From Anthoceros angustus (Eukaryota; Plantae; Anthocerotophyta): a DNA stretch of 64,000 bases. Shown here piece after piece: positions 16,270 to 45,894 of the stretch. The notes below the pieces were generated by a model. That model saw only the letters and a program-made list of their open reading frames with translations. It was not told where the DNA came from and ran no database searches. The stretch lies in contig VJWM01000003.1 in the NCBI GenBank assembly GCA_010909165.1, forward strand, positions 124,001 through 188,000. The letters are read 5' to 3'. The translations under genes were made by a program, and so were the position numbers. The first letter of the stretch is position 1; each line of letters begins with the position of its first letter.

Positions 16270-17144
16270 AGATATTCATGGAGGACAACACATCCACACG
16301 CTTCAGCCCGAGGTCCTTGAGAACTGAGATGGACTTGCATTTCCTGAGAAACACTGTACAGGAGAAGCCAGGAGTGTAACATATCCCTACACAGTACATC
16401 CAGTCTACAGGAGAATGCAACAGCTTCGCGAACTTGAGCAGACAACCCACACGTGTAGACATACTAACTGCTCCAGGATAGAATCGAAGTGTGCCATCCA
16501 CAATTCCAAATTAAAAGCTGGAAGATACACCGTCGGAGGAATTCTGATAGGCTGCTGCGAACGTTTGATCCAGCATTCGATGTGCACAAACTGCCGAAAC
16601 CCTTTTCATTCTCAGACTGGTGGCGATCCGGAACCAGGTACTCTGCAAACGGATCAGGTCTTCCATAAGCACCTATGACCTGACTGTGAAGGCTCTCGAT
16701 AACCTGGATGGACTACGGACCCAGCCCGTACCCGTGCTGACCTGACATAGCTCCCCGTTGCAATATCCCTGCCCGCTAGGAGCAGCGCAATTCGAGTTTT
16801 GACACACATATGTGCACTGGTAGTCGTGATTATCCTCAAGCCGACTACTGCAGGCAGCCCTAGTGCAAGCCGATGCAGTACAGTTGCGCAAAAGATCTGC
16901 ACACCAATGCATGCATATTGGCAACCTGCTGCAACCAGCTGCAACTTCCTACGCCACAGCTCCACAACATACCGCAACTGGCCGCATCATTCAGCACAGC
17001 TTGCTGCACAATGGCCCGCACCTCGCTCTCCCTCTGCAACACGTATGTGTCACCGGCCGATTGCGCACTCACAGCGCACCATTTCCTGACGCTGGCAAGC
17101 AGGCATCAAAGCAGAATCCGACGAAACCGCCAGTCCTCCGCCAT
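16270..17144 (-). pseudogene. alpha2delta/CACHD1-like gene, 5' part only (array copy 0)
   Basis: Homologous to exons 1-3 of copy 1; TGA at codon 13 (MAEDWRFRRILL*); homology ends shortly after ISVLKDL...VDVLSSM. Confidence 0.85.
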
Positions 17145-17855
17145 TCTCCAAGACTTCATATCTCTTCAGGACAGCTTTACCCGGGTGAATCTCCTCGCAT
17201 TCTCAGAGACTGTGTTCCAGAGAGGACGGGTCCTCCAATGTGCCATAGCCACCCGAGGCAACAGAAAGCAGGATCGCTGAACCTCCGTCCACATTTAACA
17301 TTCAACATGAAGCAAATTGACAGAGTCTCATCACCCCTGGAGCGGGGCAGTCGGGTTAGGTTAACCCGAACCCCGGTTTCTTGGAACGATTCAAGGCTCT
17401 CCGACGCGGGAGAGCTTCCCATGATCGTTGCCCTGGCAGAAGCAGCAGCAAATTCTGCGTGCATTTGCTGAACTTGCAAGGACGGTGCGCTGCAGGCGTG
17501 AGTCGGGCGCGCACACACGGAGAGAGCTTGCTTGCCGAGATCGCGGCTTCAAATGCTCTACATCGCATCGATATGGGAGCAGGTTGGTACGCGATCACTT
17601 GGCAAGCTTCACGTGTTTTCGGAGCACATCTGTATGTTTGTGCATTTCGGAGCGCTTGGGCCTTTTCTGGCGGGCATGTACCTCCAATTCTCCATCCGTG
17701 CCTGTTGCTGGAATCCTGCACAGGACTGCAGGCACAGGCTAGGGATGGACCGTGTCACATGGGGAGGAGTCTCCTCGATTGAAGGCAGCACACCCACTAC
17801 TTCAAGTCACAGATACTCCCAGCCTCCGGGTCCTTCTAGACAATAGATGTCCACT

Positions 17856-20328
17856 TCATATCTTTGGCTTGGGAGATGGTGGAGAATTCAGGGTGGTGTC
17901 GACGGAGAGACCGGGTGGATCGGCGGGATTTCCGGTGGCTGTATAGGTGGGCTTCTCGCTGGCTGTTTTCTTCCAGAGGAAATAGGCTACGACACCGACG
18001 CCCACAGCAGCAGCAGCAGCTACAAGTATGATCCACCGGAGGAAGGAAGAGTGCGAGCCAGAGAGACTGACACCTCCGCATCCAGGGCAGCATAACAGGT
18101 CCGTGTAGTTGTGAACATTATCGGTCTGCTTGCACACTGCAGTGAGAGCGGCATTGGCAGTAGTGGTACCGTTGCAGAGCTTGGTACCCCCCTGCACTGT
18201 CTGCGGCCAGATGCACTGTTATGAGCCTAGCTAGCCTCGTGCATACGCAGGGTGACTGGAGTTGGAGAGAGACTACTCACAGGACAAGGGGAGACCGACG
18301 GCGCGCCCGATGGGTAAGTTAGTGGTGACCCAGGAATCCTGTTGTTTGTGAGGAAGTCGGTGATCTGGGATTGGAGGGTTGTGGTGATCTGCGCCACCTG
18401 CATGTCGAGTCCGACCACTCCAATGAGCTGCTGACTGTCAGCAGAAAATGCTGCAAGTTCATCATCACCAAGTTCAGTGAGCACCAGGACGTGGTGGACA
18501 GTTACAAGTCAGCACCGGTTACAAGTCAGCAGACGATGATCTATACATACCCGGATATGCGACGGTGATAACCTGTCCTAGAAAACCATAATCTTCGTAA
18601 GGCAGCTGCCAAAATGCCGGCGTTGTGAGGTTCTGGGTGGCCAGGTTCCGGGATTGAGCCAAGAAGGTGAAGTATGACTTGATGGCAAATAGGGAATTTG
18701 CCAAAGAGTTGATGTCAATGGTCTCGATGTGCCCATGCTTCACCTGGCAAGCAACAGAACCCAGCGTGGGTTCCGTATCCTTGACCTCATAGACGAACAA
18801 GGCGATGTTGCTGTCATTGAGCTGTTGCAGGAGAGGAGATAGCTCCTGAGTAGAGGCAGGGGACTTGCCATCTGTGAGCACAAGTACAATCTGCGATTCA
18901 TGACACATGTCAAAAACATTTGCCCTGCGAACGTGGGGTCCCAACATTTGTCCTCCAGTCATCAGGGAATGCACCTTTGAAACTGTTTCAGCAGTCATTA
19001 CAATAGCATGTACCTTGAGCGCCCCATCGGGTGACCCTTTGCTAAAGACCTGGAGAGCTCCTGATATACCGGTCGTCAAGTTAGAAACACTTGCAGACGC
19101 ATTCACAGTCAGTTCCGGAATTCTTTGAAAGATCGGATCAGTCTTGTTAACTCCATCCGTTCCTGTGACAAGAAGCTGCAAGACAAACATAAGCATTTGA
19201 GAACTCAATCGTAGGACAAATACATAGTCTTCAAGGAGCTGACCCCAAGTATTTCTGCTCGGCACAGGGCTCGTAGACTCCAAAAGTAGTCTACCTGAAC
19301 TAACAAGTTGGCTGTGGAAGCAGTGCTGTAGGACAAGACTGTAGCACGGTCGTCTTTTGTCAGTGTAAGCAGCAGCTGCCCGGTGATGTTCTTTGCACCT
19401 TGTAAGGCAGTTGTTAAATGAAAAACTCCAAACTGCTCGTCCATTGAGGACGCCACATCCACGAGCACCACCAGGTCCTTGAGAACTGAGATGGCCCCGA
19501 CGTACCATGGTCTGACCCTTGGATCGAAACCGTCGCAGTCTCGCACTTCCTGAGAATCACAGGAGACGGCAAAGCAGTGTAACAGATTCCTACAGAGTAT
19601 AAAGGAAGCCACAGGTTCGCGAACTCTACTCACTGTTCCAGGATAGAAGCGAAAGGTGCCATCCACAGTTCCGAAATAGAAGTTGTAGTACACACCGTCG
19701 GAGGAGCTTTGATGGGCTGCTGCGAACGTTGGATCCAGCATTCGCTGTGCACAGATTGCCGACACCCTTTCCACACTCAGGCTGTTGCTCGAGAAACCCG
19801 GTACTCTGCAAACGGATCAGGCATTCCATGAGCACCTATGACCTGGCTGTAAAGGGCCCTCGTTAACCTTGATTGAGATCAGAATCCAGCCCGTGCTCAC
19901 CTGACATAGCTCCTCTTGTAGTCTGCCCTCAGGCTGTTGCAGTATCCCTGGCCGCTAGTAGCAGCGCAATCCGAGTTATGCAACACATCCACGCACTCGT
20001 AGTCCTCATTATCCTCTAGCCGCCTGCTGCAGGCAGCTCTGGAGCAAGCCGATGCGATGCAGTTGCTCACAAGATCTACACACCAAGGCATGATAGTCTA
20101 AATCCGAACCTGCACGCCCTGGCTGCAACAGCCTACTCCAAAGCTCCACAACCTACCGCAACTGGCCTCATCATTCAGCACAGCTTGCTGCACAATGGCG
20201 TGCACCTCGCTCTCCCGCTGCAACACATATGTCTCACCGGCCGATTGCGCACTCACAGCGCACTTTTTCCTGACGCTTGCAAGCAGGCAACAAAGCAGAA
20301 TCCAGCGAAACCGCCAGTCCTCCTCCAT
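17856..20328 (-). CDS. alpha2delta/CACHD1-like VWA+dCache_1 single-pass membrane protein (array copy 1), predicted intact, 8 exons, 601 aa
   Basis: Exons 20328-20157, 20075-19901, 19805-19634, 19549-19295, 19175-19014, 18890-18551, 18450-18281, 18215-17856; all introns GT-AG; 1806 nt in frame. Signal peptide; YFGTVDGTFRFYPG; FDPRVRPWYVGAISVLKDLVVLVDVASSM; LTDG; FWQLPYEDY..VITVAYP; LIGVVGLD; Cys-rich stalk; TM; about 40-aa tail. Confidence 0.85.
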
Positions 20329-21243
20329 TCTCCAAGACCTCATCATCTCTTCAGGACAGCTTTAACCGACTGAATCTCCTCGCATCCTTGGAGAGCGCGT
20401 TCCAGAAAGGACGGGTCCTCCTATGTCCCATTTCCACTGAAGGCAACCGCATGCAGGACCGCTGAATTTCCGTCCACCCACATTCAACATTCAACAGATT
20501 CAACTTGAAGCAACTTGACCGGGTCTCGCGCAACCGTGTCGGGTTAGGTTAACCCGGGCCCCGGTTTCATTAGACGATTTACAATACACATACACCGGCA
20601 GATCATCTTGCCATGATCGTTCCCCTGGCAGAAAGGCAGAAACAGCAGCAAATTCTGCGTGCATTTGCTGCGCTTGCAAGGACTGTGCACTGCAGGCGTG
20701 ACTCGCATACACCCGGACAGAGATTGCCGCCATCTCGGCTTCAAATGCTCTACGTAGCATCGATATCGGAGCAGGTGGTCTCAAATTCACCAGCTGCTGC
20801 GCACAGTGGGGCACTCGCTTCCGGTATCCTCCGATTCCACCCACCCAGCAGGACGGCCATGGCTTTCGCGGTGTCCCGCAGCTGGCTTTCAATTCGGCTT
20901 CTGGTCGTGCTGCTCATCGGCAGCCCACAACGACGCAAACGAAGACGCACGTGCCTGGCGGCGGAGGAGAATTTGGCAAAACAGATGCAGACGGCAGGCT
21001 GGTGCGCATTCACATGGCAAGCTTGTCAAACGATTTCGCTGGGGCTTTTTAAGATGTACTGGCTAGCAATCATCCGTAGCTTTGGGGCGTGGACATTTGT
21101 GGGGGAACTTAGATTCTCCATCCATATCTGTTCCTGGAATCTTGCACAGAATTCCAGGCACGGCGATGGACAAGACAACGGATTGATTGAAGTACTAAGT
21201 ACTCCCAGGTCCTGAACGTCCTACTAAGGTACCCAAGGAAGCT

Positions 21244-23717
21244 TCATATCTTTCGCTTGGAAGGACCTGGAGACTGGAGGCTGGTGTCCAAGAGGCGATC
21301 GGGTCCATAGTCTGTCACAGTGGCTGCATTGGTGTCAAGTTCGTCAATTCTGTAGCCTTCGCACGGACCCCAACACCACATCCAAAGGAAGTAGGCTACG
21401 ACACCGACGACCACAGCACCTCCAGCAGCCACAGGTATGATCCACCGAAGCTTAAGGCGGAAAGACTGCGAGCCAGATAGATTGACACCCCCGCATTCAG
21501 GGCAGCATAACAGATCCGTGTAGTTGTGAACATAATCGGTCTGCTTGCACACTGGAGTGGCAGCGGCCGCGGCACTGTTGCAGAGCTTGGTACCCGTCCC
21601 CACGGTCTGCGACCAAGTGCACTGTTGTGAGCCTAGGTAGCCTGATGCATACGCAGGGAGATTGAGTGGGAGAGTGGACACTCACAGGACAAGGGGAGAC
21701 CGACGGTGCGCCCAATGAGTAAGCTATTGGGGACACAGGAATCCTGTTGTTTGTCAGGAACTCGGTGATCTCGGACTGGAGGGCTGGGGTGATTAGATCC
21801 ACCTGCATGTCGAGTCCGGCTACTCCAATGAGCTGACCGTCCGCAGAAATTGCTGCAAGTTCATCACCAACAAGTTCTATCAACATCAGGACGTGGTGAA
21901 CAGTTGTCAGCAGCGATAAAGCAAACGATGATAGTTACCAGGCTGTGCGACGGTGATGACCTGCCCTCGGAAACTGTAATCTTCGTAAGGCAGTTGCCAA
22001 AATGTCTGCTGTTGAGGCGTAGACAGGTTTCGGGATTGAGCCAAGAACGTGAAATAAGACTTGATGGCAAAGAGCGAATTCTGCAAGGAGTTGATGTCAA
22101 CAGTCTCGACGTGCCCATTCTTAACCTGGCAAGCAACCGCAGCCAGCGTGGAATCCGTGTCCTTGATCTCGTAGACGAACAAGGCGATGTTGCTGTCATT
22201 AAATTGTTGCAGGAGAGAAGAGAGCTCCTCAGCAGCAGCTGGGGACTGGCCATTTGTGAGCACAAGTACAATCTGCAAGCAAGGATTAATGTCACACATC
22301 AAGGAATTTGACCCCAGTTATCAAGGAATGCACGTTTGAAACTGTTTCAGCAGTCATTACAATAGCACATACCTTGAGCGCCCCAACAGCTGATCCAGTT
22401 TTAAAGACTTGGAGAGCTTGTGATATCCCAGTCGTCAAGTTTGAAACTTTTGCCGAAGCATTAACAGTCAGCTCCAGAATTTGTTGGAAAATTGGATCAC
22501 TAATGTTCACTCCATCTGTTACCAGAAGCTGCAAGGCAAAGATGCGCATTTGAGGACTCAATCGTAGAACAAATATCTAGTCTTCAAGGACCTCACCTAA
22601 GTGTTTCTGCTCCGGACAGGGCTCGTACACTCCAAAACAAGCCTACCTGACCTAATGGGTTGGTTGTGGGAGGACTGCTGTAGGAGAGGACTGTAGCACG
22701 GTCGTCTTGCGTTAGTGTACGCAGCAGCTGCTCCGTGATGCGCTTTGCACCTGCTAAGGCAGTTGTTATCTGAAAAACTCCAAACTGCTGATCCATGGAG
22801 GACGACACATCCACAAGCACCACAAGGTCCTTGAGAACTGAGATGGCCCCTGTGTACCATGGTCTGATCCTTGGATCGTAACCGTTGCAGTCTTGCACTT
22901 CCTGGGAATCACAGGAGAAGCCAGAGCAGTGTCACAGATCCCTCCAGAGTACATACAGTCTACTAGAGAATACAACAGATTCGCGAACTTGAGCAAAAAT
23001 GCCACACCTGCAGACATACTCACTGTTCCAGGATAGAAGCGAAAGGTACCATCCACAGTGCCGAAGTAGAAGTTGTAATAATTACCATCGGAATTCTGAG
23101 AGGCTGCTGCAGCGAACGTGTGGTCCAGCATTCGATGTGCACAGATTGCAAAACTCCTTTCAATACTCACACTGCTGGTGTTCAGCAAGCCAGGTACTCT
23201 GCAAACGGATCAGGCATTGAATAAGCACCTGTGACCTCACTGTAAAGGCTCGCCAACCTTGAGATAACGCAGCAACCTGAGATAGCTCCTCTGGTAGTTT
23301 GCCCTCAGGCTGTTGCAGGCCCCCTGCCCGCCAGGAGCAGAGCAATTCAAGTTTTGCCACACATCCACGCACTGGTACTGTTGATTATCTTCAAGCAGCC
23401 TGTAGCAGGCAGCCCGGGAGCAAGCCGATGCGGAGCAGTTGCTCACAAGATCTGCACACCACGGCATGCTAGTCCAATTCCGGAACTTGACAACTTGGCT
23501 GCAAGCAGCTGCAACAGCCTACTCCACACTCCACAGCTCCACAACCTACCGCAACTGTACGCATCATTCACCACAGCCTGTTGCACAATGGCTCGCACCT
23601 CGCTCTCCCGCTGCAACACATATTGCTCACCAACCGATTGCGCACCACAGCGCACTTCCTGACGCTTGCAAGCAGGCAACAAAGCAGAATCCAGCGAAAC
23701 CGCCAGTCCTCCTCCAT
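21244..23717 (-). pseudogene. alpha2delta-like gene (array copy 2); exons 2-8 open, exon 1 frameshifted as assembled
   Basis: YDPRIRPWYTGA, DVSSSM, LTNG, FWQLPYEDY, LIGVAGLD, TM. The start of exon 1 (23640-23830) switches to copy-1 sequence with a 4-nt loss, while an intact version of this exon is at 25133-25423, so the lesion may be an assembly chimera. Confidence 0.7.
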
Positions 23718-23829
23718 TCTCCAAGACCTCATCATCTCTTCAGGACAGCTTTAACCGACTGAATCTCCTCGCATCCTTGGAGGCGCGTTCCAGAAAGGAC
23801 GGGTCCTCCTATGTCCCATTTCCACTGAA

Positions 23830-26800
23830 GGCAACCGCAGCCAGCGTGGAATCCGTGTCCTTGATCTCGTAGACGAACAAGGCGATGTTGCTGTCATTAA
23901 ATTGTTGCAGGAGAGAAGAGAGCTCCTCAGCAGCAGCTGGGGACTGGCCATTTGTGAGCACAAGTACAATCTGCAAGCAAGGATTAATGTCACACATCAA
24001 GGAATTTGACCCCAGTTATCAAGGAATGCACGTTTGAAACTGTTTCAGCAGTCATTACAATAGCACATACCTTGAGCGCCCCAACAGCTGATCCAGTTTT
24101 AAAGACTTGGAGAGCTTGTGATATCCCAGTCGTCAAGTTTGAAACTTTTGCCGAAGCATTAACAGTCAGCTCCAGAATTTGTTGGAAAATTGGATCACTA
24201 ATGTTCACTCCATCTGTTACCAGAAGCTGCAAGGCAAAGATGCGCATTTGAGGACTCAATCGTAGAACAAATATCTAGTCTTCAAGGACCTCACCTAAGT
24301 GTTTCTGCTCCGGACAGGGCTCGTACACTCCAAAACAAGCCTACCTGACCTAATGGGTTGGTTGTGGGAGGACTGCTGTAGGAGAGGACTGTAGCACGGT
24401 CGTCTTGCGTTAGTGTACGCAGCAGCTGCTCCGTGATGCGCACCTGCTAAGGCAGTTGTTATCTGAAAACTCCAAACTGCTGATCCATGGAGGACGACAC
24501 ATCCACAAGCACCACAAGGTCCTTGAGAACTGAGATGGCCCCTGTGTACCATGGTCTGATCCTTGGATCGTAACCGTTGCAGTCTTGCACTTCCTGGGAA
24601 TCACAGGAGAAGCCAGAGCAGTGTCACAGATCCCTCCAGAGTACATACAGTCTACTAGAGAATACAACAGATTCGCGAACTTGAGCAAAAATGCCACACC
24701 TGCAGACATACTCACTGTTCCAGGATAGAAGCGAAAGGTACCATCCACAGTGCCGAAGTAGAAGTTGTAATAATTACCATCGGAATTCTGAGAGGCTGCA
24801 GCGAACGTGTGGTCCAGCATTCGATGTGCACAGATTGCAAAACTCCTTTCAATACTCACACTGCTGGTGTTCAGCAAGCCAGGTACTCTGCAAACGGATC
24901 AGGCATTGAATAAGCACCTGTGACCTCACTGTAAAGGCTCGCCAACCTTGAGATAACGCAGCAACCTGAGATAGCTCCTCCTGGTAGTTTGCCCTCAGGC
25001 TGTTGCAGGCCCCCTGCCCGCTAGGAGCAGAGCAATTCAAGTTTTGCCACACATCCACGCACTGGTACTGTTGATTATCTTCAAGCAGCCTGTAGCAGGC
25101 AGCCCGGGAGCAAGCCGATGCGGAGCAGTTGCTCACAAGATCTGCACACCACGGCATGCTAGTCCAATTCCGGAACTTGACAACTTGGCTGCAAGCAGCT
25201 GCAACAGCCTACTCCACACTCCACAGCTCCACAACCTACCGCAACTGTACGCATCATTCACCACAGCCTGTTGCACAATGGCTCGCACCTCGCTCTCCTT
25301 CTGCAACACATATTGCTCACCAACCGATTGCGCATTCACAAAGCACCATTTTGTGCTTGCAAGCAGGCAACAAAGCAGAATCCAACGAAACCGCCAGTCC
25401 TCCTCCATTTCCCAAGACCTCATCCTCTCTTCCCGACCGCTTTAACCGGCTGAATATCCTGACGTCCTTCGAAAGGCCGGGTGCTCCAGTCTCCCATCGC
25501 CGCCGAAGCCGACGAAACGCAGGATCGAAGAACCTCCGTTCAGATCCACGTGTGGCAAATGGACCGGGTCTCCCGACCGCGAGTCGCCTGACCGGGCAGT
25601 CGGGTTAGGTTAAAACCAGAACCCCGGTTTCGTGAAACGATTTATACACATACACCGGCAGATCATCTTGCCATGATCGTTCCCCTGGCAGAAAGGCAGA
25701 AACAGCAGCAAATTCTACGGCAGCCCACAACGACGCAAACGAAGACGCACGTGCCTGGCGGCGGAGGAGAATTTGGCAAAACAGATGCAGACGGCAGGCT
25801 GGTGCGCATTCACAAGCACCATTTGTGCTTGCAAGCAGGCAACAAAGCAGAATCCAACGAAACCGCCAGTCCTCCTCCATTTCCCAAGACCTCATCCTCT
25901 CTTCCCGACCGCTTTAACCGGCTGAATATCCTGACGTCCTTCGAAAGGCCGGGTGCTCCAGTCTCCCATCGCCGCCGAAGCCGACGAAACGCAGGATCGA
26001 AGAACCTCCGTTCAGATCCACGTGTGGCAAATGGACCGGGTCTCCCGACCGCGAGTCGCCTGACCGGGCAGTCGGGTTAGGTTAAAACCAGAACCCCGGT
26101 TTCGTGAAACGATTTCGCTGGGGCTTTTAAGATGTACTGGCAATCATCATCCGTAGCTTTGGGGCGTGGACATTTGTGGGGAACTTAGATTCTCCATCCA
26201 TATCTGTTCCTGGAATCTTGCACAGAATTCCAGGCACGGCGATGGACAAGACAACGGATTGATTGAAGTACTAAGTACTCCCAGGTCCTGAACGTCCTAC
26301 TAAATTACCCAAGGAAGCTTCATATCTTTCGCTTGGAAGGACCTGGAGATGGGAGGCTGGTGTCCAAGAGGCGATCGGGTCCATAGTCTGTCACAGTGGC
26401 TGCATTGGTGTCAAGTTCGTCAATTCTGTGGCCTTCGCACGGACCCCAACACCACATCCAAAGGAAGCAGGCTACGACACCGACGACCACAGCACCTCCA
26501 GCAGCCACAGGTATGATGATCCACTGAAGCTTAAGGCGGAAAGACTGCGAGCCAGATAGATTGACACCCCGCATTCAGGGCAGCATAACAGATCCGTGTA
26601 GTTGTGAACATAATCGGTCTGCTTGCACACTGCTATGGCAGCGGCCTCTACACCGTAGCAGAGCGTGGAATCCGCCTTCAAGGTCTGCGGCCAAGTTGTG
26701 AGCCTAGGTAGCCTCGTGCATGCATACGCAGGGAGATTGGAGAGGGAGAGGGCACTCACAGGACAAGGGGAGACCGACGGCGCGCCCGACAGGTTAGTTA

Positions 26801-29800
26801 GTATTGACCCAGGATTCCTGTTCTTTCTCAGGAATTCCCTGATCTCAGGCTTGAGGGCTGGGGTGATTAGATCCACCTGCATGTCGAGTCCGGCTACTCC
26901 AATGAGCTGACCGTCCGCAGAAATTGCTGCAAGTTCATCACCAACAAGTTCTATCAACATCAGGACGTGGTGAACAGTTGTCAGCAGCGATAAAGCAAAC
27001 GATGATAGTTACCAGGCTGTGCGACGGTGATGACCTGCCCTCGGAAACTGTAATCTTCGTAAGGCAGTTGCCAAAATGTCTGCTGTTGAGGCGTAGACAG
27101 GTTTCGGGATTGAGCCAAGAAGGTGAAATATGACTTGATAGCAAATAGCGGATTCTGCAAGGAGTTGATGTCAACAGTCTCGACGTGCCCATTCTTAACC
27201 TGGCAAGCAACCGCAGCCAGCGTGGAATCCGCCTTCAAGGTCTGCGGCCAAGTTGTGAGCCTAGGTAGCCTCGTGCATGCATACGCAGGGAGATTGGAGA
27301 GGGAGAGGGCACTCACAGGACAAGGGGAGACCGACGGCGCGCCCGACGGGTTAGTTAGTATTGACCCAGGATTCCTGTTCTTTCTCAGGAATTCTGATCT
27401 CAGGCTTGAGGGCTGGGGTGATTTGCCCACCATGTCGAGTCCGGCTACTCCAATAAGCTGACCGTCCACAGATATTGCTGCAAATTCACCACCAACACGT
27501 TCCGTGAGCATCCAGGACAGTTGTCACCGGCGGTAAGGAGACGGATGACAGATGCATACCCGGATAAGCCACGGTGATGACCTCCCCTCGGAAATTGGAA
27601 TCGTTGTAAGGCAGTTGCCAAAATGCCAGTTGATGAGGCGTTGCCAGGTTTCGGGATTGAGCCAAGAAGGTGAAATATGACTTGATAGCAAATAGCGGAT
27701 TCTGCAAGGAGCTGATGTCAACAGTCTCGATGTGCCTTGCTTCACCTGGCAAGCCACACCAGCCAGCGTGGGATCCGTGTCCTTGATCGTTGCCGTAGCA
27801 GAAACAGCAGCAAATTCTACGGCAGCCCGATCCACCAACAAGGCGAAGTGCACGCTGGCGGAGAATTCCGCAAAACAGGTGCAGACCGCAGGCTGTCACG
27901 CAATCACACAGCAAGCTTCTCAGATGATTCCGCTTCCCTTCATATCCTGCGCCGGGAGAACCTGGAGATGGGAGGCTGGTTTCGCCGGAGATCGGATTCA
28001 AAGCTTTTCGCACTGGTTGCATTGGTGTCAAGCTCGTAACGTTTGATGGATTTGCGTGACGGATCCCGACACCACATCCAAAGGAAGCAGGCTACGACAC
28101 CGACCGCCAGAGCACCTCAGCAGCTGCAGGTATGATGATCCACTTCAGGCGGGAAGAGTGCGAGGTACTTATAGAGACACCTCCGCATTCAGGACAGCAT
28201 AACAGATCCGTGTAGTTGTGAACATTATCGGTCTGCTTGCACACTGCTATGGCAGCGGCCTCTACACCGTAGCAGAGCGTGGAATCCGCCTTCAAGGTCT
28301 GCGGCCAAGTTGTGAGCCTAGGTAGCCTCGTGCATGCATACGCAGGGAGATTGGAGAGGGAGAGGGCACTCACAGGACAAGGGGAGACCGACGGCGCGCC
28401 CGACAGGTTAGTTAGTATTGACCCAGGATTCCTGTTCTTTCTCAGGAATTCCCTGATCTCAGGCTTGAGGGCTGGGGTGATTTGCCCCACCTGCATGTCG
28501 AGTCCGGCTACTCCAATAAGCTGACCGTCCACAGATATTGCTGCAAATTCACCACCAACACGTTCCGTGAGCATCCAGGACAGTTGTCACCGGCGGTAAG
28601 GAGACGGATGACAGATGCATACCCGGATAAGCCACGGTGATGACCTCCCTCGGAAATTGGAATCGTTGTAAGGCAGTTGCCAAAATGCCAGTTGATGAGG
28701 CGTTGCCAGGTTTCGGGATTGAGCCAAGAAGGTGAAATATGACTTGATAGCAAATAGCGGATTCTGCAAGGAGCTGATGTCAACAGTCTCGATGTGCCTT
28801 GCTTCACCTGGCAAGCCACACCAGCCAGCGTGGGATCCGTGTCCTCCATCTCGTAGACGAACAAGGCGATGTTGCTGTCATTAAATTGTTGCAGGAGAGG
28901 ATAGAGCTCCTCAGCAGCAGCTGCAGGTATGATGATCCACTTCAGGCGGGAAGAGTGCGAGGTACTTATAGAGACACCTCCGCATTCAGGACAGCATAAC
29001 AGATCCGTGTAGTTGTGAACATTATCGGTCTGCTTGCACACTGCTATGGCAGCGGCCTCTACACCGTAGCAGAGCGTGGAATCCGCCTTCAAGGTCTGCG
29101 GCCAAGTTGTGAGCCTAGGTAGCCTCGTGCATGCATACGCAGGGAGATTGGAGAGGGAGAGGGCACTCACAGGACAAGGGGAGACCGACGGCGCGCCCGA
29201 CGGGTTAGTTAGTATTGACCCAGGATTCCTGTTCTTTCTCAGGAATTCCCTGATCTCAGGCTTGAGGGCTGGGGTGATTAGATCCACCTGCATGTCGAGT
29301 CCGGCTACTCCAATGAGCTGACCGTCCGCAGAAATTGCTGCAAGTTCATCACCAACAAGTTCTATCAACATCAGGACGTGGTGAACAGTTGTCAGCAGCG
29401 ATAAAGCAAACGATGATAGTTACCAGGCTGTGCGACGGTGATGACCTGCCCTCGGAAACTGTAATCTTCGTAAGGCAGTTGCCAAAATGTCTGCTGTTGA
29501 GGCGTAGACAGGTTTCGGGATTGAGCCAAGAAGGTGAAATATGACTTGATAGCAAATAGCGGATTCTGCAAGGAGTTGATGTCAACAGTCTCGACGTGCC
29601 CATTCTTAACCTGGCAAGCAACCGCAGCCAGCGTGGAATCCGCCTTCAAGGTCTGCGGCCAAGTTGTGAGCCTAGGTAGCCTCGTGCATGCATACGCAGG
29701 GAGATTGGAGAGGGAGAGGGCACTCACAGGACAAGGGGAGACCGACGGCGCGCCCGACGGGTTAGTTAGTATTGACCCAGGATTCCTGTTCTTTCTCAGG

Positions 29801-32800: not shown

Positions 32801-34420
32801 TCACTCGTCAAAGAATTTGGCCTCCGGCCATCAAGGAATGCATGTTTCAGCAGTCATGACGACAGCCCACGGGTACCTTGAGCGCGGCTGACCCGTTGTT
32901 GAAGACTTGGAGAGCTTGTGATATACCAGTCGTCAAATTAGAAACGTTTGCAGAAGCATTAACAGTCAGTTTCTGAATTTGTTGGAATATCGGATCTGTA
33001 CTAGCGTCCACCTGATCTGTTACCCGAAGCTGCAAGACAGGGATACGCAGTTGAGAAGTCAATCATAGAACAAATATGTTGTCGTCTTGAAAGGAGCTCA
33101 CATAAGTAGCTTTTCTGCTCAAGATACGGCTTGTAGACTACGAAACAAACCATACCTGACCTAACAGGTTGGCTGTGGGAGGAGCTGTAGGACAAGACTG
33201 TAGCACGGTCGTCTTGTGTCAGTGTAAGCAGCAGCTGCTCTGTGATGCTCTGGGCACCTGCTAAGGCAGTTGTTATTTCGAAAACTCCTAATCTCTCATT
33301 CATGGACGACGCCACATCCACAAGCACCACAAGGTCCTTGAGAACTGAAATGGCCCCTTTGTACCATGGTCTGATCCTTGGATCGTAACGGTTGCACTCT
33401 TGGACTTCCTGAGAATCACAAGAGAAGCCAGGGCCGTGTAACACATCTCCACAAAGTACATACAGTCCACTGGAGAATGCAAGATACTCACTGTTCCAGG
33501 ATAGAAGCGAAAGGTACCATCCACAGTGCCGAAGTAGAAGTTGTAATAATTACCATCGGAATTCTGAGAGGCTGCTGCAGCGAACGTGTGGTCCAGCATT
33601 CGATGTGCACAGATTGCAAAACTCCTTTCAATACTCACACTGCTGGTGTTCAGCAAGCCAGGTACTCTGCAAACGGATCAGGCATTGAATAAGCACCTGT
33701 GACCTCACTGTAAAGGCTCTCGCCAACCTTGAGATAACGCAGCAACCTGAGATAGCTCCTCTGGTAGTTTGCCCTCAGGCTGTTGCAGGCCCCCTGCCCG
33801 CTAGGAGCAGAGCAATTCAAGTTTTGCCACACATCCACGCACTGGTACTGTTGATTATCTTCAAGCAGCCTGTAGCAGGCAGCCCGGGAGCAAGCCGATG
33901 CGGAGCAGTTGCTCACAAGATCTGCACACCACGGCATGCTAGTCCAATTCCGGAACTTGACAACGGCTGCAAGCAGCTGCAACGGCCTACTACTCCACAC
34001 TCCACAGCTCCACAACCTACCGCAACTGTACGCATCATTCACCACAGCCTGTTGCACAATGGCTCGCACCTCGCTCTCCTTCTGCAACACATATTGCTCA
34101 CCAACCGATTGCGCATTCACAAAGCACCATTTTGTGCTTGCAAGCAGGCAACAAAGCAGAATCCAACGAAACCGCCAGTCCTCCTCCATTTCCCAAGACC
34201 TCATCCTCTTCCTGACCGCTTTAACCGGCTGAATATCCTGACGTCCTTCGAAAGGCCGGGTGCTCCAGTCTCCCATCGCCGCCGAAGCCGACGAAACGCA
34301 GGATCGAAGAACCTCCGTTCAGATCCACGTGTGGCAAATGGACCGGGTCTCCCGACCGCGAGTCGCCTGACCGGGCAGTCGGGTTAGGTTAAAACCAGAA
34401 CCCCGGTTTCGTGAAACGAT
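23830..34420 (-). repeat. Scrambled mosaic of near-identical fragments of alpha2delta-like copies 1-3 and their upstream regions
   Basis: Identical ORFs recur at offsets of 2411 bp (26665/29076, 27123/29534), 2840 bp (28279/31119) and about 990 bp (31856/32847). Non-collinear joins fall on short shared words. Confidence 0.9.
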
Positions 34421-34616
34421 TTGAAGTATATTGGGGGCCATCTTGCTTTGATCCTTGATCGTTGCCGTAGCAGAAACAGCAGCAAATTCTACGGCAGCCC
34501 ACAACGATCCACCAACAAGGCGAAGTGCACGCTGGCGGAGAATTCCGCAAAACAGGTGCAGACCGCAGGCTGTCACGCAATCACACAGCAAGCTTCTCAG
34601 ATGATTCCGCTTCCCT

Positions 34617-37085
34617 TCATATCCTGCGCCCGGGAGAACCTGGAGATGGGAGGCTGGTTTCGCCGGAGAGATCGGATTCAAAGCTTTTCGCACTGGTTGC
34701 ATTGGTGTCAAGCTCGTAACGTTTGATGGATTTGCGTGACGGATCCCGACACCACATCCAAAGGAAGCAGGCTACGACACCGACCGCCAGAGCACCTCCA
34801 GCAGCTGCAGGTATGATGATCCACTTCAGGCGGGAAGAGTGCGAGGTACTTATAGAGACACCTCCGCATTCAGGACAGCATAACAGATCCGTGTAGTTGT
34901 GAACATTATCGGTCTGCTTGCACACTGCTATGGCAGCGGCCTCTACACCGTAGCAGAGCGTGGAATCCGCCTTCAAGGTCTGCGGCCAAGTTGTGAGCCT
35001 AGGTAGCCTCGTGCATGCATACGCAGGGAGATTGGAGAGGGAGAGGCACTCACAGGACAAGGGAGACCGACGGCGCGCCCGACAGGTTAGTTAGTATTGA
35101 CCCAGGATTCCTGTTCTTTCTCAGGAATTCCCTGATCTCAGGCTTGAGGGCTGGGGTGATTTGCCCCACCTGCATGTCGAGTCCGGCTACTCCAATAAGC
35201 TGACCGTCCACAGATATTGCTGCAAATTCACCACCAACACGTTCCGTGAGCATCCAGGACAGTTGTCACCGGCGGTAAGGAGACGGATGACAGATGCATA
35301 CCCGGATAAGCCACGGTGATGACCTCCCCTCGGAAATTGGAATCGTTGTAAGGCAGTTGCCAAAATGCCAGTTGATGAGGCGTTGCCAGGTTTCGGGATT
35401 GAGCCAAGAAGGTGAAATATGACTTGATAGCAAATAGCGGATTCTGCAAGGAGCTGATGTCAACAGTCTCGATGTGCCCTTGCTTCACCTGGCAAGCCAC
35501 ACCAGCCAGCGTGGGATCCGTGTCCTCCATCTCGTAGACGAACAAGGCGATGTTGCTGTCATTGAATTGTTGCAGGAGAGGATAGAGCTCCTCGGAAGAG
35601 GCAGGGGACTTGCCATTTGTGAGCACAAGTACAATCTGCAAGGATAAATGTCACTCGTCAAAGAATTTGGCCTCCGGCCATCAAGGAATGCATGTTTCAG
35701 CAGTCATGACGACAGCCCACGGTACCTTGAGGCCCCAGCGGCTGACCCGTTGTTGAAGACTTGGAGAGCTTGTGATATACCAGTCGTCAAATTAGAAACG
35801 TTTGCAGAAGCATTAACAGTCAGTTTCTGAATTGTTGGAATATCGGATCTGTACTAGCGTCCACCTGATCTGTTACCCGAAGCTGCAAGACAGGGATACG
35901 CAGTTGAGAAGTCAATCATAGAACAAATATGTTGTCGTCTTGAAAGGAGCTCACATAAGTAGCTTTTCTGCTCAAGATACGGCTTGTAGACTACGAAACA
36001 AACCATACCTGACCTAACAGGTTGGCTGTGGGAGGAGCTGTAGGACAAGACTGTAGCACGGTCGTCTTGTGTCAGTGTAAGCAGCAGCTGCTCTGTGATG
36101 CTCTGGGCACCTGCTAAGGCAGTTGTTATTTCGAAAACTCCTAATCTCTCATTCATGGACGACGCCACATCCACAAGCACCACAAGGTCCTTGAGAACTG
36201 AAATGGCCCCTTTGTACCATGGTCTGATCCTTGGATCGTAACGGTTGCACTCTTGGACTTCCTGAGAATCACAAGAGAAGCCAGGGCCGTGTAACACATC
36301 TCCACAAAGTACATACAGTCCACTGGAGAATGCAAGATACTCACTGTTCCAGGATAGAAGCGAAGAGTGCCGTCCACAGTTCCGAAGAACGAGTGGTAAT
36401 ATGCACCGTCGGTGGAATTTTGATGGGCTGCTTTGAACGTTTTGTCCAGCATTCGATGTGCACAGATTGCAAAAATCCTTTCATTGCTCAGGCTGCTGGG
36501 GGTGTTCAGGAAGCCAGGTAGTCTGCAAACAGATCAAGCATTCGATAAGCGCCTATGACCTGAATGTAAGGGCCCTCGTTAACCTTCACATTCCCGGATC
36601 CAGCCCGTGCTAACCTGACATAGCTCCTCTTGTAGTTTGCCCTAACTCTGTTGCAGTAGCCTTGCCCGCTAGGAGCAGGGCAAAGCGAGTTTTGCGACAC
36701 ATCTATGCACTCGTAGTTGCGATTATCCTCAAGCAGCCTATTGCAGGCAGCTCTGGAGCAAGGCGATGCGGTGCAGTTGCTCACAAGATCTGCACAGCAA
36801 GGCAGGCTAGTCCTAATCCGAACCTGCACAACCTGGCTGCAACCAGCTGCAACGGCCTACTACTCCACTCCACACTCCAGAGCTCCACAACCTACCGCAA
36901 CTGGCCGCATCATTCAGCACAGCCTGCTCCACAATGGCCTGCACTGCGCTCTCCCTCTGCAACACATAGTCCTTACCGTCCGATTCCGCATTCACAAGGC
37001 ACCATTTTCTGACGCTCGCAATCAGGCAGCAAAGCAGAATTGAACGAAACCGCCAGTCCGCCTCCTTCCCCCGAGATCCCTTCAT
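34617..37085 (-). pseudogene. alpha2delta-like gene (array copy 3); complete exon set with a few small indels (pseudogene or consensus errors)
   Basis: MKGSRGKEADWRFRSILLCC...; YDPRIRPWYKGA; DVASSM; LTNG; FWQLPYNDS; LIGVAGLD; TM. Indels near 36035 and in G-runs near 35045-35065. Confidence 0.75.

Positions 37086-39945: not shown

Positions 39946-39951
<6 letters not shown>

Positions 39952-40027
<76 letters not shown>
39952..40027. repeat. (AT)n microsatellite, about 38 units
   Basis: Directly visible perfect dinucleotide run. Confidence 0.98.
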
Positions 40028-40029
<2 letters not shown>

Positions 40030-42780: not shown

Positions 42781-43100
42781 GCACCGGTGCTGTCACTCTG
42801 GGCTATAGGTAGTTTCGAGATGAGCAATCGTAAGCATGATTGAACCTCTCATTTGAATAAAACTGGATAAAATTGTGAAGCCAAGACTGTCTGCAGTGTT
42901 TTGCACAACAGCAAATCACCACCAATTCACAACGCCGATATTGACGTTGTGCAATTTAGGCATGTCATGCAGCAGCAGCCCAGGACACGCAGCAAGGCTG
43001 GGACAGTTTCTTGAGAAGAGCTGATAACCGTCTCCCCGTTATTAACTTTATGATCACGTATGCAAGAGGTGGAAGATTTAATTCCTGGTCAAAGTTGGAT

Positions 43101-45894
43101 CTAAAGCCTGGAGCGGGCATCAGAGGCTGTACGCTGAAATGCTGTGTCCGCCTGAAAGCTGGGTTTACTGAGGGGAGACAGCCTCATGAGGGACCTTCGG
43201 GCCGAGAAGAGAATACCGAGGACTGTCGATAATGCAGCCACTGCACACACAACTACGATGATGATGATGGTTCTAGAGGGAGATGTCTTGGAACCAGCCA
43301 AAGCCAATCCGCCACACTCCTCACAGCACACCAGGTCCTTGTAGCTGTGCTTGGTGTCGGTTTGTGGGCAGATTGCAATGATGGAACTATTCCCGCAGTC
43401 TAGTTCAGTAGCTTTAGCCTGCAAAACAGAACTAGATTTTACACTGGAAAAGTCTTCAGCAAAGTGCTGGAAGAGTCTGCAACTACGGGGTGGTGTTGCC
43501 CTTACCACACTGCACTCATTTATAGTAGCTCGAGTGTTCAGAAAGGAGCCATTGCTTCTTGCTGCAAGGCTGCTTTCAACAAGCTGTTGGTAGACTCGGT
43601 CGAGGCCGGCCACTTGGACATCGATTCCTGCCACTCCAATGAGGTGCCCATCTGCGGATAAAGCTGGAATGTGGACATATGTACCCTGTGGTTAGTTAAT
43701 CTCTAGAGTCTTACGCTGTAGGATTAGGTGAGGCTAGGTGAAGAGATGTAGCAAAAGGCATGCAGTGGGTGGACGAAGGATACCAGAGGCGGCAACGGTT
43801 ATAATCTCCGTTTGAGAGTCATAATCTGTGTAGATAGGTTGCCAGAATACATTGCTTGATACGGAGATGTGAGATCGAGCCAAGAAGCTGTAATAGGATC
43901 TCAAAGCAGAGAGAGGATTTTCCACTTGCTGTAAGCTTAGCTCCTCGTAGTACCCCTCAACCTCACAAGCAACAGCACTGAGTGTTGCATCCTTGTTCCC
44001 AAGTTGGTAGACAAACAATCGAACCATGTTCCTTTGCAGCTGATCAATGACGGGAAGAAAGTCTGCTAGAGATGATGGGGACGATCCGTCTGTCAAGAAC
44101 AAAATAATCTGCAGCAGCATATGGAAACTTGGATGCTTCAGGAGGGCCACACTTCACGGCAGAAGATGGACTAGCCAGGATGAAGAGTACCTTTAGAGAC
44201 CCAGGCTTTGAACTGTTAAAAACCGGCACAGTCTGCATCAAGGCTGCTGTGGTGTTTGAGGATGCCATGATCGTAACAGTGGCATTCTGTACTGATAGAA
44301 CCAAGCCCTTGAACATAGGATCCTCTGTGTCTAAGTAATCACCCAAGACAGTATACTAGACCACCCAAAACCCCATTATAAATCAGTATGGGCAGTAGCC
44401 CCCTTCCAGGACGAGTGATGAAGCTGCCGAGAACAATATCTACGATTATCATGACCACATTTTCCAGTTGCTACGTTGAACCAGAAGCAAAATAGTTATC
44501 TCACTGATAACAGACCAAATGGACTTACCGATGTCCCGGAAAGAGATGAATCAGAAACTGTCATGACTGTTACACGATCATCTTCCGTGAGTGTGTTCAG
44601 TAGATTGACAGTGAGTTCCTGAGCACCAGCCAAAGGAGTAAGTATTTTCTGACTGACATTTGATTGATGTCCCATTGAAGGTCCATTGTCGATAAGCACA
44701 ACAATATCTTTGACCACTGATATGGCTCCACTATACCTGAACACCCCACAGTTCAAAACTTAGGCCACTGACAACTGATCTATGAAGCCCAGAGATTTAG
44801 AGTTCTCAATGCAGAACATTCTGAACATGGCCCACAACAGTATCTATGCGGCTTCAGTGAAAGCATTGGCACAAACTTATAAATCGAAGAGGTAGGTTTG
44901 CGACTTACCAAGGCCTGACACGTGGATCATAGCCCCGACAGCCTTCGGTCACCTGAAAAAGTTGGACAGACTTCCCATGAGATGACAGGAAGTCTGTTCC
45001 TTCCCAAACTCTTCAGAAAAGCTTGATCTCCACAGTATCAGGTTCTGGCCATTTCTAGCTATCCTGGAGGGTCAATGCTTGTACCAGCATCTGGATAAAG
45101 CATTCTGGCAGGGTTCTTACTTGTCCTGGATAGATCCGGGAGGAACCCTCAAAGGAGCCAAAGTAAATTGCAAAGAAATATTGCTGAAACTTTTGCTCAT
45201 TGTACACATCCAAAAATGTTCGATCCAGTAACCGCTGACTGCAAATGGAATTCCGCATCTGTATTGACAGAGGATCAGTATCATTTGTGGGAGTCCTGCA
45301 TCAACCCCAACCAGCCAGCAGAATGTTCCGCATTTAGCCAGAAGGTCTTGCTGAAGACAGAAAAGCCTCACAAACATCTCAGCAATCATAGCCATCACAG
45401 TAAAAACCTGGACAGAAGAGAGACGGCAGATGAGCCATTCCTTCGTCCACTGACCTTACAAAAGCCGTGTCCAGTAAAACTCTGTGGCTATTACAAGTTT
45501 GACTGCTGGTGGAAGTGCAGGCGGAGTTGTTGAGCAGAAAGCCACACTCATAGCTCGAGAAATCTTCGATGAGCGGAGCACAGGCCCCTCGAGAGCATTC
45601 ACAAGATGCCACCAGAGCTGCATGTTCACAAACCAGACGCAGCAGGGATCACAAGGCCCTCCTGGTGACCGACAACATCGAAGAAACCACAAGGAAACGC
45701 AAAAGGTTGAAGAAGGGACCACAACACCTACAGCAAGCCATAGCGTCATTGATCACGGCTTGGCTTGCAATGCTCAGCACCTGCCTCTCTAGCTCATCCA
45801 GAAAGACGTCCCCAGGCGTACTGCCACTCACACGAGACTTCCCAGAGACTGTGAATTGCAGCCAGTACAACAGCAGGAGCGGCCAGAGCCACAT
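43101..45894 (-). CDS. Divergent alpha2delta/CACHD1-like VWA+dCache_1 membrane protein, predicted intact, 9 exons, 572 aa
   Basis: Exons 45894-45732, 45617-45455, 45295-45121, 44952-44909, 44736-44529, 44355-44191, 44108-43784, 43663-43506, 43418-43101; GT-AG introns whose phases match the array copies; 1719 nt in frame. YFGSFEGSSRIYPG; YDPRVRPW|Y; FLTDG; FWQPIYTDY; LIGVAGID; CC..CG; TM. The last intron is in frame and less certain. Confidence 0.88.

What the first reader, a model, noticed from the sequence alone, without database searches (positions are those of the whole stretch)
16270..45894. Family of compact alpha2delta-like receptors with an intact amino-acid-binding motif in a plant
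Seen: two predicted intact genes (17856-20328; 43101-45894) plus damaged copies encode signal peptide, Cys-rich N-terminus, dCache_1 interrupted by VWA, Cys-rich stalk, one TM and a short tail (about 570-600 aa, no second Cache domain visible). After splicing they carry YxxxxRxWY before the VWA domain, then Y and D 29-30 residues apart after it (PYEDY...GVVGLD; IYTDY...GVAGID). Established: this is the dCache_1 amino-acid-sensing motif described by Gumerov et al. 2022 (PNAS), split by VWA in animal alpha2delta/CACHD1, and land plants lack canonical CaV alpha1 partners. Inference: an expanded, channel-independent family of apoplastic amino-acid receptors behaving like receptor-like proteins. 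Homologues in seed-free plants may already be catalogued, but I know of no functional description.
Basis: partly seen in the sequence, partly recalled or inferred. Interest (0 to 1): 0.85.

Follow-up and report, generated by a model that had tools for sequence, protein, structure and literature searches.

The report
Kinase-less plant receptors resembling alpha2delta
A tandem cluster in a seed-free-plant-like genome holds two intact genes, one nearly intact gene and many broken copies for membrane proteins whose outer part matches the amino-acid-binding unit of animal alpha2delta proteins; the protein type is already catalogued in plants but has never been tested.

Summary
Two clean GT-AG gene models on the minus strand (17856-20346, 602 aa; 43101-45894, 601 or 572 aa) encode a signal peptide, a Cys-rich N-terminal region, a Cache module split by a VWA domain, a Cys-rich stalk, one TM helix and a tail of about 40 aa. 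A third copy is intact apart from a 1-nt deletion. The rest of 16.3-37.1 kb is a mosaic of broken duplicates.

Homology to alpha2delta is real. A profile of plant homologues hits alpha2delta-1 at E=4e-25 with the motif columns aligned. Two AlphaFold models of homologues hit alpha2delta-1 first (Foldseek E 1e-15 and 1e-21) and CACHD1 second.

Corrections:
- Gene 1 has F, not Y, at the first motif position.
- Only the distal Cache module is predicted; no proximal module and no second dCache.
- The MIDAS is non-canonical in both intact genes.

The nearest relatives are bryophyte receptor kinases (Riccia, Physcomitrium) and kinase-less proteins of hornwort, liverwort and fern. The window genes are therefore kinase-less members of a streptophyte family. 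Gumerov et al. 2022 already reported this family, including the kinase fusions and its absence from angiosperms, and metaRLK 2.0 lists a bryophyte 'VWA' RLK family. Amino-acid sensing is plausible but untested.

Verdict: new member of a known kind, moderate interest.

The parts
17856..20346 (-). Gene 1: intact 8-exon gene, 602 aa. Layout: signal peptide, Cys-rich region, Cache N-part, VWA, Cache C-part, Cys-rich stalk, TM, 38-aa tail.
   Evidence: GT-AG model with no internal stop; matches the family profile at E 6e-146; 39% identity over 570 aa to the Riccia fluitans receptor kinase ectodomain.
19502..19528 (-). Gene 1, N-terminal half of the amino-acid motif: FDPRVRPWY (residues 187-195).
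   Evidence: Exon 4 alone hits alpha2delta-1 (E 1.3e-3) and a bacterial dCache chemoreceptor that carries the identical string (6pxy).
18404..18599 (-). Gene 1, C-terminal half of the motif: Y416 (18599-18597) and D447 (18406-18404), separated by intron 6.
   Evidence: These columns align with the Y and D of alpha2delta-1 in the profile hit.
18891..19013 (-). Gene 1 intron 5: 123 nt, in frame, no stop. If retained it would insert 41 aa into the VWA domain.
   Evidence: All homologues lack these 41 residues. GT..AG borders; gene 2 and copies C, D and K have an intron at the same place.
43101..45894 (-). Gene 2: intact divergent paralogue (about 31% identity to gene 1). 601 aa, or 572 aa with an extra 87-nt intron at 43505-43419.
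   Evidence: family profile E 2e-125.
44733..44931 (-). Gene 2, N-terminal half of the motif: YDPRVRPW|Y, split by a 172-nt intron between W and Y.
43620..43832 (-). Gene 2, C-terminal half of the motif: Y399 (43832-43830) and D429 (43622-43620).
21244..23735 (-). Copy C: all 8 exons present and exons 2-8 form one open 540-aa frame. A single 1-nt deletion in exon 1 (about 23645) follows the signal peptide. Has YDPRIRPWY and a canonical DVSSS MIDAS string.
   Evidence: About 80% nucleotide identity to gene 1. dN/dS against gene 1 is 0.48.
34617..37085 (-). Copy K: full-length pseudogene with frameshifts in exons 4, 5 and 7.
16274..17159 (-). Copy A: N-terminal fragment (residues about 2-216) with a degenerate motif.
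23830..25895 (-). Copy D: N-terminal two-thirds fragment, 98% identical to copy C over 1.65 kb.
26318..34590 (-). Mosaic of C-terminal and N-terminal gene fragments (copies E-J), built from nested segmental duplications of 86-99% identity.

Best explanation
Shown. The region is a birth-and-death tandem array of a streptophyte receptor family. The ectodomain is a single PAS-like Cache module with a VWA domain inserted into it. This is the same unit that forms the gabapentin/leucine site of animal alpha2delta-1. The two intact genes and one nearly intact gene are the kinase-less form: signal peptide, glycosylated ectodomain, Cys-rich stalk, one TM helix and a tail of about 40 aa. Their closest full-length relatives include receptor kinases of liverworts and mosses that carry the same ectodomain.

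Inferred. The Cache pocket keeps the carboxylate-binding R, W and Y and the amine-binding Y and D. It therefore most likely binds a free alpha-amino acid, or a close analogue such as GABA, in the apoplast. With no catalytic tail, the signal would pass to a partner, either a co-receptor kinase or a kinase-bearing paralogue, as with other plant receptor-like proteins. The VWA face would be available for that protein contact. No CaV channel is involved.
For: Gene models are open, and both proteins fit the family profile end to end.

Homologues:
- Riccia RLK P0003 (Pkinase 1e-46, VWA 6e-9).
- Physcomitrium RLK P0024.
- Kinase-less Nothoceros P0023, Psilotum P0038 and Marchantia P0045.
- A Ginkgo fragment.

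Link to alpha2delta and bacterial sensors:
- The family profile hits alpha2delta-1 at E 4e-25 over profile positions 112-455. FDPRvRPWY aligns to YDVRRRPWY, and Y..D aligns to the Y and D of alpha2delta-1.
- It also hits the PctA/B/C amino-acid sensor domains at about 1e-5.
- AF2 models of two homologues (pLDDT 70 and 75) hit alpha2delta-1 first (E 1e-15 and 1.5e-21, about 460-490 aligned columns), then CACHD1, then plain VWA proteins.

Motif:
- It is conserved across the plant family.
- The F variant of gene 1 is identical to the string in PDB 6pxy. PMC11487536 lists 6PXY with the CtaA complexes; CtaA is an amino-acid chemoreceptor with micromolar affinity.

Selection: dN/dS is 0.38 in the Cache+VWA core between gene 1 and copy C, and about 0.25 between genes 1 and 2.

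No kinase exon lies downstream of either gene.

Land plants lack 4D-CaV channels. CACHD1 complexes with FZD5 and LRP6 show a channel-independent co-receptor role for this fold in animals.
Against: - No ligand, transcript or partner data exist for these genes or for any plant homologue.
- The structure models are of homologues with 33-39% identity, not of the window proteins, and pocket geometry could not be measured.
- Pfam dCache_1 and VWA_N hits stay below threshold.
- The membrane-proximal module that relays the signal in bacterial dCache sensors is missing, so the transmission route is unknown.
- MIDAS is DxAxS in gene 1 and DxGxS in gene 2.
- dN/dS of 0.48 and heavy pseudogenisation show relaxed or shifting constraint in the array.
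Confidence: 0.5

Rival explanations
1. The working surface is the VWA domain and the Cys-rich regions, not the Cache pocket. The proteins would bind a protein or a cell-wall polymer, acting in adhesion or wall-integrity sensing. The amino-acid motif would be a structural relic.
For: VWA is the only domain that passes Pfam thresholds in most homologues. The conserved TDG and SSN positions, and a canonical DxSxS in copy C, suggest metal-dependent ligand binding in some members. In alpha2delta and CACHD1 the VWA/MIDAS face makes the protein contacts (my own knowledge; the CACHD1-FZD5-LRP6 entries appear).
Against: The five or six pocket residues are kept across liverwort, moss, hornwort, fern and both window paralogues at 30-40% overall identity, which a relic would not explain. 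The MIDAS serine is lost in both intact window genes.
Confidence: 0.2
2. The kinase-less proteins act as decoys or modulators of the kinase-bearing paralogues. They would compete for ligand, or heterodimerise without signalling themselves.
For: Both kinase-bearing and kinase-less forms occur within single lineages, for example Riccia P0003 and P0009. Genes 1 and 2 sit in one clade with the Riccia receptor kinase (89/95 support), so the two forms are not separated into distinct clades there.
Against: No kinase-bearing family member is present in this window, and none from this organism could be retrieved. Whether the organism has one is unknown.
Confidence: 0.15
3. The whole array is decaying, and genes 1 and 2 are unexpressed or on the way to becoming pseudogenes.
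For: Most copies are truncated or frameshifted, and copy C differs from an intact gene by one deletion. dN/dS in the stalk/TM/tail part is 0.91. The window's proteins were not found in the protein collections searched.
Against: Two 8-exon frames of about 1.8 kb stay open with canonical splice sites. The core dN/dS is 0.38 and 0.25. The motif is intact in both. Kinase-less homologues are transcribed in Nothoceros and Psilotum, as they come from transcriptome assemblies.
Confidence: 0.1
4. They are auxiliary subunits of some other plant ion channel, in the way alpha2delta serves CaV channels.
For: Fold homology to alpha2delta only.
Against: Land plants have lost four-domain CaV/NaV channels. The same ectodomain is fused to RLK-type kinases in bryophytes, which points to receptor signalling. 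The second dCache domain, which makes up much of alpha2delta, is absent.
Confidence: 0.05

Closest known systems
Metazoan alpha2delta-1 (CACNA2D1), e.g. PDB 7mix_D, 8fd7_D, 8if3_A
   Same: Same order of elements: Cache N-part (Pfam VWA_N) carrying [Y/F]xxxxRxWY, then VWA, then Cache C-part carrying Y and D. Profile E 4e-25. It is the top Foldseek hit for two homologue models.
   Different: alpha2delta is about 1,100 aa. It has a second dCache_1 that encloses the first, a proximal module, a perfect DxSxS MIDAS, alpha2/delta cleavage and a membrane anchor without a cytosolic tail (my own knowledge), and it partners with CaV alpha1. The window proteins are about 600 aa, have one Cache module, a TM helix plus tail, and no CaV partner in land plants.
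CACHD1 (PDB 8s7c_A, 9eq6_A)
   Same: Second-best structural match (E 1e-10 to 3e-15). It is an alpha2delta-like protein that works as a co-receptor independently of channels, as shown by its FZD5/LRP6 complexes. Its non-canonical MIDAS (DxGxS, my own knowledge) matches the gene 2 string DNGPS.
   Different: CACHD1 has two dCache_1 domains and keeps the amino-acid motif in the second one (Gumerov 2022). The window proteins keep it in the VWA-split module.
Streptophyte VWA/dCache_1AA receptor kinases (Riccia fluitans KAL2612061.1, Physcomitrium patens XP_024368104.1); the 'VWA' RLK family of metaRLK 2.0
   Same: Homologous ectodomain from the N-terminal Cys-rich region to the TM helix (39% and 33% identity to gene 1), with the same motif and cysteine pattern.
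   Different: They carry a C-terminal Ser/Thr kinase domain. The window genes stop about 40 aa after the TM helix.
Kinase-less plant homologues: Nothoceros aenigmaticus P0023 (603 aa), Psilotum nudum P0038 (590 aa), Marchantia polymorpha MPTK1_7g15420 (645 aa)
   Same: Same length and architecture. Gene 1 and copy C group with the hornwort protein (support 100/99).
   Different: Only 28-36% identical to the window proteins. None has a described function. No tandem array is documented for them here.
Bacterial dCache_1AA sensor domains (PctA/B/C 5ltx, 5lt9, 5ltv; CtaA 6pxy)
   Same: The same pocket motif. The gene 1 string DGFDPRVRPWY is identical to that in 6pxy. Profile hits at about 1e-5.
   Different: The bacterial domains have no VWA insertion, have a membrane-proximal module, and are flanked by two TM helices that feed a cytoplasmic transmitter.

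Membership tests
Eukaryotic single dCache_1AA proteins with VWA insertion (Gumerov et al. 2022) | VWA domain inserted into the Cache distal module, between the two halves of the amino-acid motif | tested here: met
   Order of elements in genes 1 and 2; alignment to alpha2delta-1; secondary-structure order in two models.
Eukaryotic single dCache_1AA proteins with VWA insertion (Gumerov et al. 2022) | AA_motif residues equivalent to PctA Y121, R126, W128, (Y129), Y144 and D173 | tested here: met
   Gene 2 and copy C have all of them. Gene 1 has F for Y121 and keeps the rest. The F variant occurs in 6pxy.
Eukaryotic single dCache_1AA proteins with VWA insertion (Gumerov et al. 2022) | Y to D spacing of about 27-34 residues | tested here: met
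   30 residues (gene 1) and 29 residues (gene 2) between Y and D.
Eukaryotic single dCache_1AA proteins with VWA insertion (Gumerov et al. 2022) | Complete double-module dCache_1: distal plus membrane-proximal PAS-like modules | tested here: not met
   Models of P0023 and P0003 show one five-stranded module, then a helix and about 60 low-confidence Cys-rich residues before the TM helix. In gene 1 only 93 residues lie between D447 and the TM helix, and about 30 of them are a P/S/T-rich linker. Caveat: the models are of homologues, and that stretch has low confidence.
Eukaryotic single dCache_1AA proteins with VWA insertion (Gumerov et al. 2022) | Binds amino acids | not testable with these tools
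   Needs ITC or thermal shift on the ectodomain.
Metazoan alpha2delta / CACHD1 | Sequence and fold homology across VWA_N, VWA and Cache | tested here: met
   Profile E 4e-25; exon 4 alone E 1.3e-3; Foldseek E 1e-15 and 1.5e-21.
Metazoan alpha2delta / CACHD1 | Two dCache_1 domains, one nested in the other | tested here: not met
   The proteins are about 600 aa. No further Cache module appears in the models or in the profile alignment.
Metazoan alpha2delta / CACHD1 | Canonical DxSxS MIDAS (alpha2delta) | tested here: not met
   Gene 1 has DVASS and gene 2 has DNGPS. Copy C and some fragments have DVSSS.
Metazoan alpha2delta / CACHD1 | Association with a CaV alpha1 subunit | not testable with these tools
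   Land plants are reported to have lost 4D-CaV/NaV channels (PMC6509283).
Streptophyte VWA receptor-like kinases (Lehti-Shiu and Shiu 2012 as cited in metaRLK 2.0) | Homologous VWA-containing ectodomain | tested here: met
   Gene 1 against Riccia RLK: 39% identity over 570 aa, E 3e-112. Gene 2: 36%, E 7e-99.
Streptophyte VWA receptor-like kinases (Lehti-Shiu and Shiu 2012 as cited in metaRLK 2.0) | Intracellular protein kinase domain | tested here: not met
   Stop codons come 38-40 aa after the TM helix. The only kinase-coding DNA in the window (46679-47887) lies upstream of gene 2 and belongs to an LRR-RLK-type gene.
Plant receptor-like proteins (operational class) | Signal peptide, ectodomain, single TM helix, short cytosolic tail without a catalytic domain | tested here: met
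Plant receptor-like proteins (operational class) | Signals through a partner receptor kinase | not testable with these tools
   Needs co-immunoprecipitation or genetics.

The most novel reading that the evidence does not exclude
Seed-free land plants sense free amino acids (or GABA-like molecules) in the apoplast through an alpha2delta-type Cache pocket. The pocket is carried on kinase-bearing and kinase-less receptors that evolve by rapid birth and death, like immune-receptor clusters. If so, ligand sensing rather than channel regulation would be the ancestral job of the alpha2delta fold. The minimal plant form (distal module plus VWA, no proximal module) would transmit the signal by a route unlike bacterial dCache sensors.
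Probability: 0.25. Interest if true: 0.75.

Novelty: new member of a known kind. Interest (0 to 1): 0.42.

Why it matters
Plants are known to sense extracellular amino acids mainly through glutamate-receptor-like channels. A second, unrelated receptor class, using the same pocket that binds leucine and gabapentin in human alpha2delta-1, would open a tractable question in bryophyte and fern models. It would also bear on what alpha2delta proteins did before they became channel subunits.

This locus adds three things:
- a compact kinase-less form;
- evidence of purifying selection on the pocket-bearing core;
- a picture of rapid local turnover of the gene family.

The protein class and its presence in streptophytes are already published, so the value lies in pointing to an untested hypothesis rather than in discovery.

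Tried and rejected
1. My first gene 1 model read a 123-nt in-frame intron as coding (643 aa). Alignment with homologues exposed it. As a result, the single exhaustive search used a query that was partly intron, and only residues 95-208 matched.
2. My first gene 2 model used a 49-nt intron. I replaced it with an 82-nt intron at the conserved position.
3. Single exons against Pfam or PDB were mostly uninformative.
4. A word-indexed search for the window's own annotated proteins found nothing. The profile word search returned only 7 hits.
5. I looked for intact models of copies C and K by moving every splice site up to 15 nt either way. There were none.
6. The supplementary datasets of Gumerov et al. 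are not held, so I could not check whether these exact proteins are listed there.
7. Organism identity could not be established. The best relatives are only 36-50% identical. Gene 1 grouping with a hornwort protein, the G+C content of about 50% and the 80-170-nt introns are compatible with a hornwort, but this is a guess.
8. Rfam and tRNA scans of the window found nothing.
9. The spliced window proteins have no reference form, so I did not submit them to Pfam, PDB or structure prediction. Homologues and single exons stood in for them.


Full report
**What is there**

The window has about 50% G+C and short GT-AG introns, so it is eukaryotic. A tblastn search with a first gene model showed a minus-strand tandem array from 16.3 to 37.1 kb, plus a divergent copy at 43.1-45.9 kb.

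After correction against homologues, gene 1 (20346-17856) has 8 exons and encodes 602 aa. Gene 2 (45894-43101) has 8 exons and encodes 601 aa. All introns are GT-AG and 80-173 nt long. Gene 2 may lose a further in-frame 87-nt intron, which would give 572 aa.

Two of my early model errors are instructive:
- In gene 1, a 123-nt intron is in frame and has no stop codon.
- In gene 2, the matching intron is 82 nt, not the 49 nt I first assumed. Only the alignment with homologues revealed both errors.

Each protein has the following features:
- an N-terminal hydrophobic leader;
- seven to eight cysteines in the first 110 residues;
- eight N-glycosylation sequons;
- six cysteines just before a single TM helix;
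- a tail of about 40 residues.

**The other copies**

- Copy C (23735-21244) has all eight exons with conserved splice sites and an uninterrupted 540-aa frame through exons 2-8. A 1-nt deletion in exon 1, just after the leader, breaks the frame.
- Copy K has frameshifts in exons 4, 5 and 7.
- No choice of splice sites within 15 nt rescues either copy.
- The remaining copies are N- or C-terminal pieces. They sit in nested segmental duplications of 73-99% identity, the pattern expected from repeated unequal crossing-over.

The 'family' here therefore consists of two intact genes, one nearly intact gene and debris.

**Homology**

An exhaustive HMMER search of 1.84 billion representative proteins, using exon 5/6 of gene 1, found only 20 clusters. 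The named ones are plant proteins:
- Riccia fluitans: a 912-aa protein with a Pkinase domain, and a 507-aa protein;
- Physcomitrium patens: 966-975-aa proteins annotated as receptor-like kinases;
- Nothoceros: 603 aa;
- Psilotum: 590 aa;
- Marchantia: 645 aa, 'VWFA domain-containing';
- a Ginkgo fragment.

Genes 1 and 2 align with these proteins from the Cys-rich N-terminus to the TM helix. Identity to the Riccia receptor kinase is 39% for gene 1 and 36% for gene 2 (E 3e-112 and 7e-99). Both window proteins match a five-member family profile at E 6e-146 and 2e-125.

**Link to alpha2delta**

- The family profile hits alpha2delta-1 chains in the PDB at E about 4e-25 over profile positions 112-455. 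In that alignment the plant FDPRvRPWY lines up with YDVRRRPWY, and the plant Y...D lines up with the corresponding Y and D of alpha2delta-1.
- The same profile hits the amino-acid-binding sensor domains of PctA, PctB and PctC at about 1e-5.
- Exon 4 of gene 1 alone reaches alpha2delta-1 at E 1.3e-3. It also matches a bacterial chemoreceptor (6pxy) that carries the identical DGFDPRVRPWY string.
- Both window proteins give significant pairwise hits to an insect alpha2delta-like protein that has Pfam VWA_N and dCache_1 (E 4e-9 and 4e-10).
- AlphaFold models of the Nothoceros protein (pLDDT 70, pTM 0.69) and the Riccia ectodomain (pLDDT 75, pTM 0.76) retrieve alpha2delta-1 as their twelve best PDB matches (E down to 1e-15 and 1.5e-21, about 460-490 aligned columns). 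CACHD1 comes next, and generic VWA proteins only after that.

1. Gene 1 has F, not Y, at the first motif position, as do the Riccia and Physcomitrium kinases. Gene 2, copy C and the hornwort and fern proteins have Y. The F form is the one in 6pxy. PMC11487536 lists 6PXY among the complexes of CtaA, a Pseudomonas fluorescens amino-acid chemoreceptor with micromolar affinities. The substitution is therefore probably tolerated.
2. Both models show a single five-stranded PAS-like module split by the VWA domain. After it come one helix and a low-confidence Cys-rich stretch of about 60 residues before the TM helix. No membrane-proximal module is predicted, so 'dCache' in the strict double-module sense is not met.
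3. The MIDAS string is DVASS in gene 1 and DNGPS in gene 2. The frameshifted copy C has the canonical DVSSS.
4. By Pfam thresholds, only VWA and, in some homologues, the first-PDC sensor model are significant. dCache_1 and VWA_N stay below their cut-offs. This explains why databases call these proteins 'VWA'.

**Selection and phylogeny**

- dN/dS between gene 1 and copy C is 0.48 overall. It is 0.38 in the Cache+VWA core and 0.91 in the stalk, TM and tail.
- dN/dS between genes 1 and 2 is about 0.25, with saturated dS.
- In a maximum-likelihood tree of ectodomains, gene 1 and copy C group with the hornwort protein (support 100/99).
- Gene 2 joins that group and the Riccia kinase in a moderately supported clade (89/95) whose internal order is unresolved.
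- Genes 1 and 2 are therefore old paralogues, and kinase-bearing and kinase-less forms occur together within that clade. The tree has few taxa and long branches.

**What is already known**

Gumerov et al. 2022 (PMC8915833) state the following:
- dCache_1AA proteins occur in Archaeplastida but were not detected in angiosperms;
- proteins with a single dCache_1 carrying the VWA insertion occur in diverse eukaryotes;

metaRLK 2.0 (PMC13174206) lists a 'VWA' RLK family found only in bryophytes and cites Lehti-Shiu and Shiu 2012. I found no paper that tests a plant member. Land plants are reported to have lost four-domain CaV/NaV channels (PMC6509283).

**Mechanism**

Shown: the architecture, the homology, conservation of the pocket residues, the absence of a kinase, and purifying selection on the core.

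Inferred: the pocket binds an alpha-amino acid or a close analogue in the apoplast. Because the tail is short, the signal would pass to a partner kinase, or the protein would modulate a kinase-bearing paralogue. The VWA face would be available for that contact.

The CACHD1 complexes with FZD5 and LRP6 among the structural matches show that this fold works as a channel-independent co-receptor in animals.

The rivals are VWA-centred binding of a protein or wall component, a decoy role, a decaying locus, and an auxiliary subunit of some other channel. They are weighed in the rival-explanations section.

**Verdict**

These are new, kinase-less, tandemly arrayed members of a family that has been catalogued but never functionally studied.

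**Limits**

- The splice models rest on homology only.
- The window's spliced proteins could not be submitted to the structure or family tools, because they have no reference form.
- The source organism is unknown. The data are compatible with a hornwort, but that is a guess.

Noticed in passing
window 46679-47887 (-): A single exon encodes a TM helix plus a protein kinase domain (Pfam E 7e-32), immediately upstream of gene 2. Its best relatives are LRR receptor kinases at about 50% identity. The catalytic loop reads HCNVK, with Asn where the HRD Asp should be, and DYG replaces DFG, so it may be an atypical or inactive kinase. No LRR-coding exons upstream were found by tblastn.
   Followed up: partly
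window 53177-54556 (-): A 460-aa open frame with copia-type gag, zinc knuckle and Pol beta-barrel domains: a fragment of an LTR retrotransposon.
   Followed up: partly
window 26318-35593: Nested segmental duplications of gene fragments at 98-99% identity (for example 27780-28912 against 34452-35593, and 30948-32494 against 34786-36335). These indicate very recent unequal recombination or gene conversion inside the array.
   Followed up: partly
window 22880-22866 (copy C), 24572-24558 and 30908-30894: The frameshifted or fragmentary copies keep a canonical DVSSS MIDAS string, while both intact genes have lost the middle serine (DVASS, DNGPS).
   Followed up: no
window 60677-63999 (-): Two long open frames (500 and 618 aa, the second running off the window end) in a stretch of strongly negative GC skew. 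There is no significant Pfam match apart from a sub-threshold BAG-domain hit. Identity unknown.
   Followed up: no
L001:495-5399 (Logan SRR33208280 contig): A contig from an unidentified sequencing run carries exons of a related ectodomain (47% identity in the conserved part), followed within 1 kb by a 415-aa kinase-domain product. This is a further kinase-bearing family member from an unknown organism.
   Followed up: no
window 13471-14454 (-): A 328-aa open frame with a weak, sub-threshold Roc/Ras-like GTPase hit (E 2e-5). It is probably part of a neighbouring gene.
   Followed up: no
window 6001-8000, 38001-40000, 48001-50000: Three stretches with markedly lower G+C (33-39%, against about 50% elsewhere). 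They were not examined and may be intergenic or repeat-derived.
   Followed up: no
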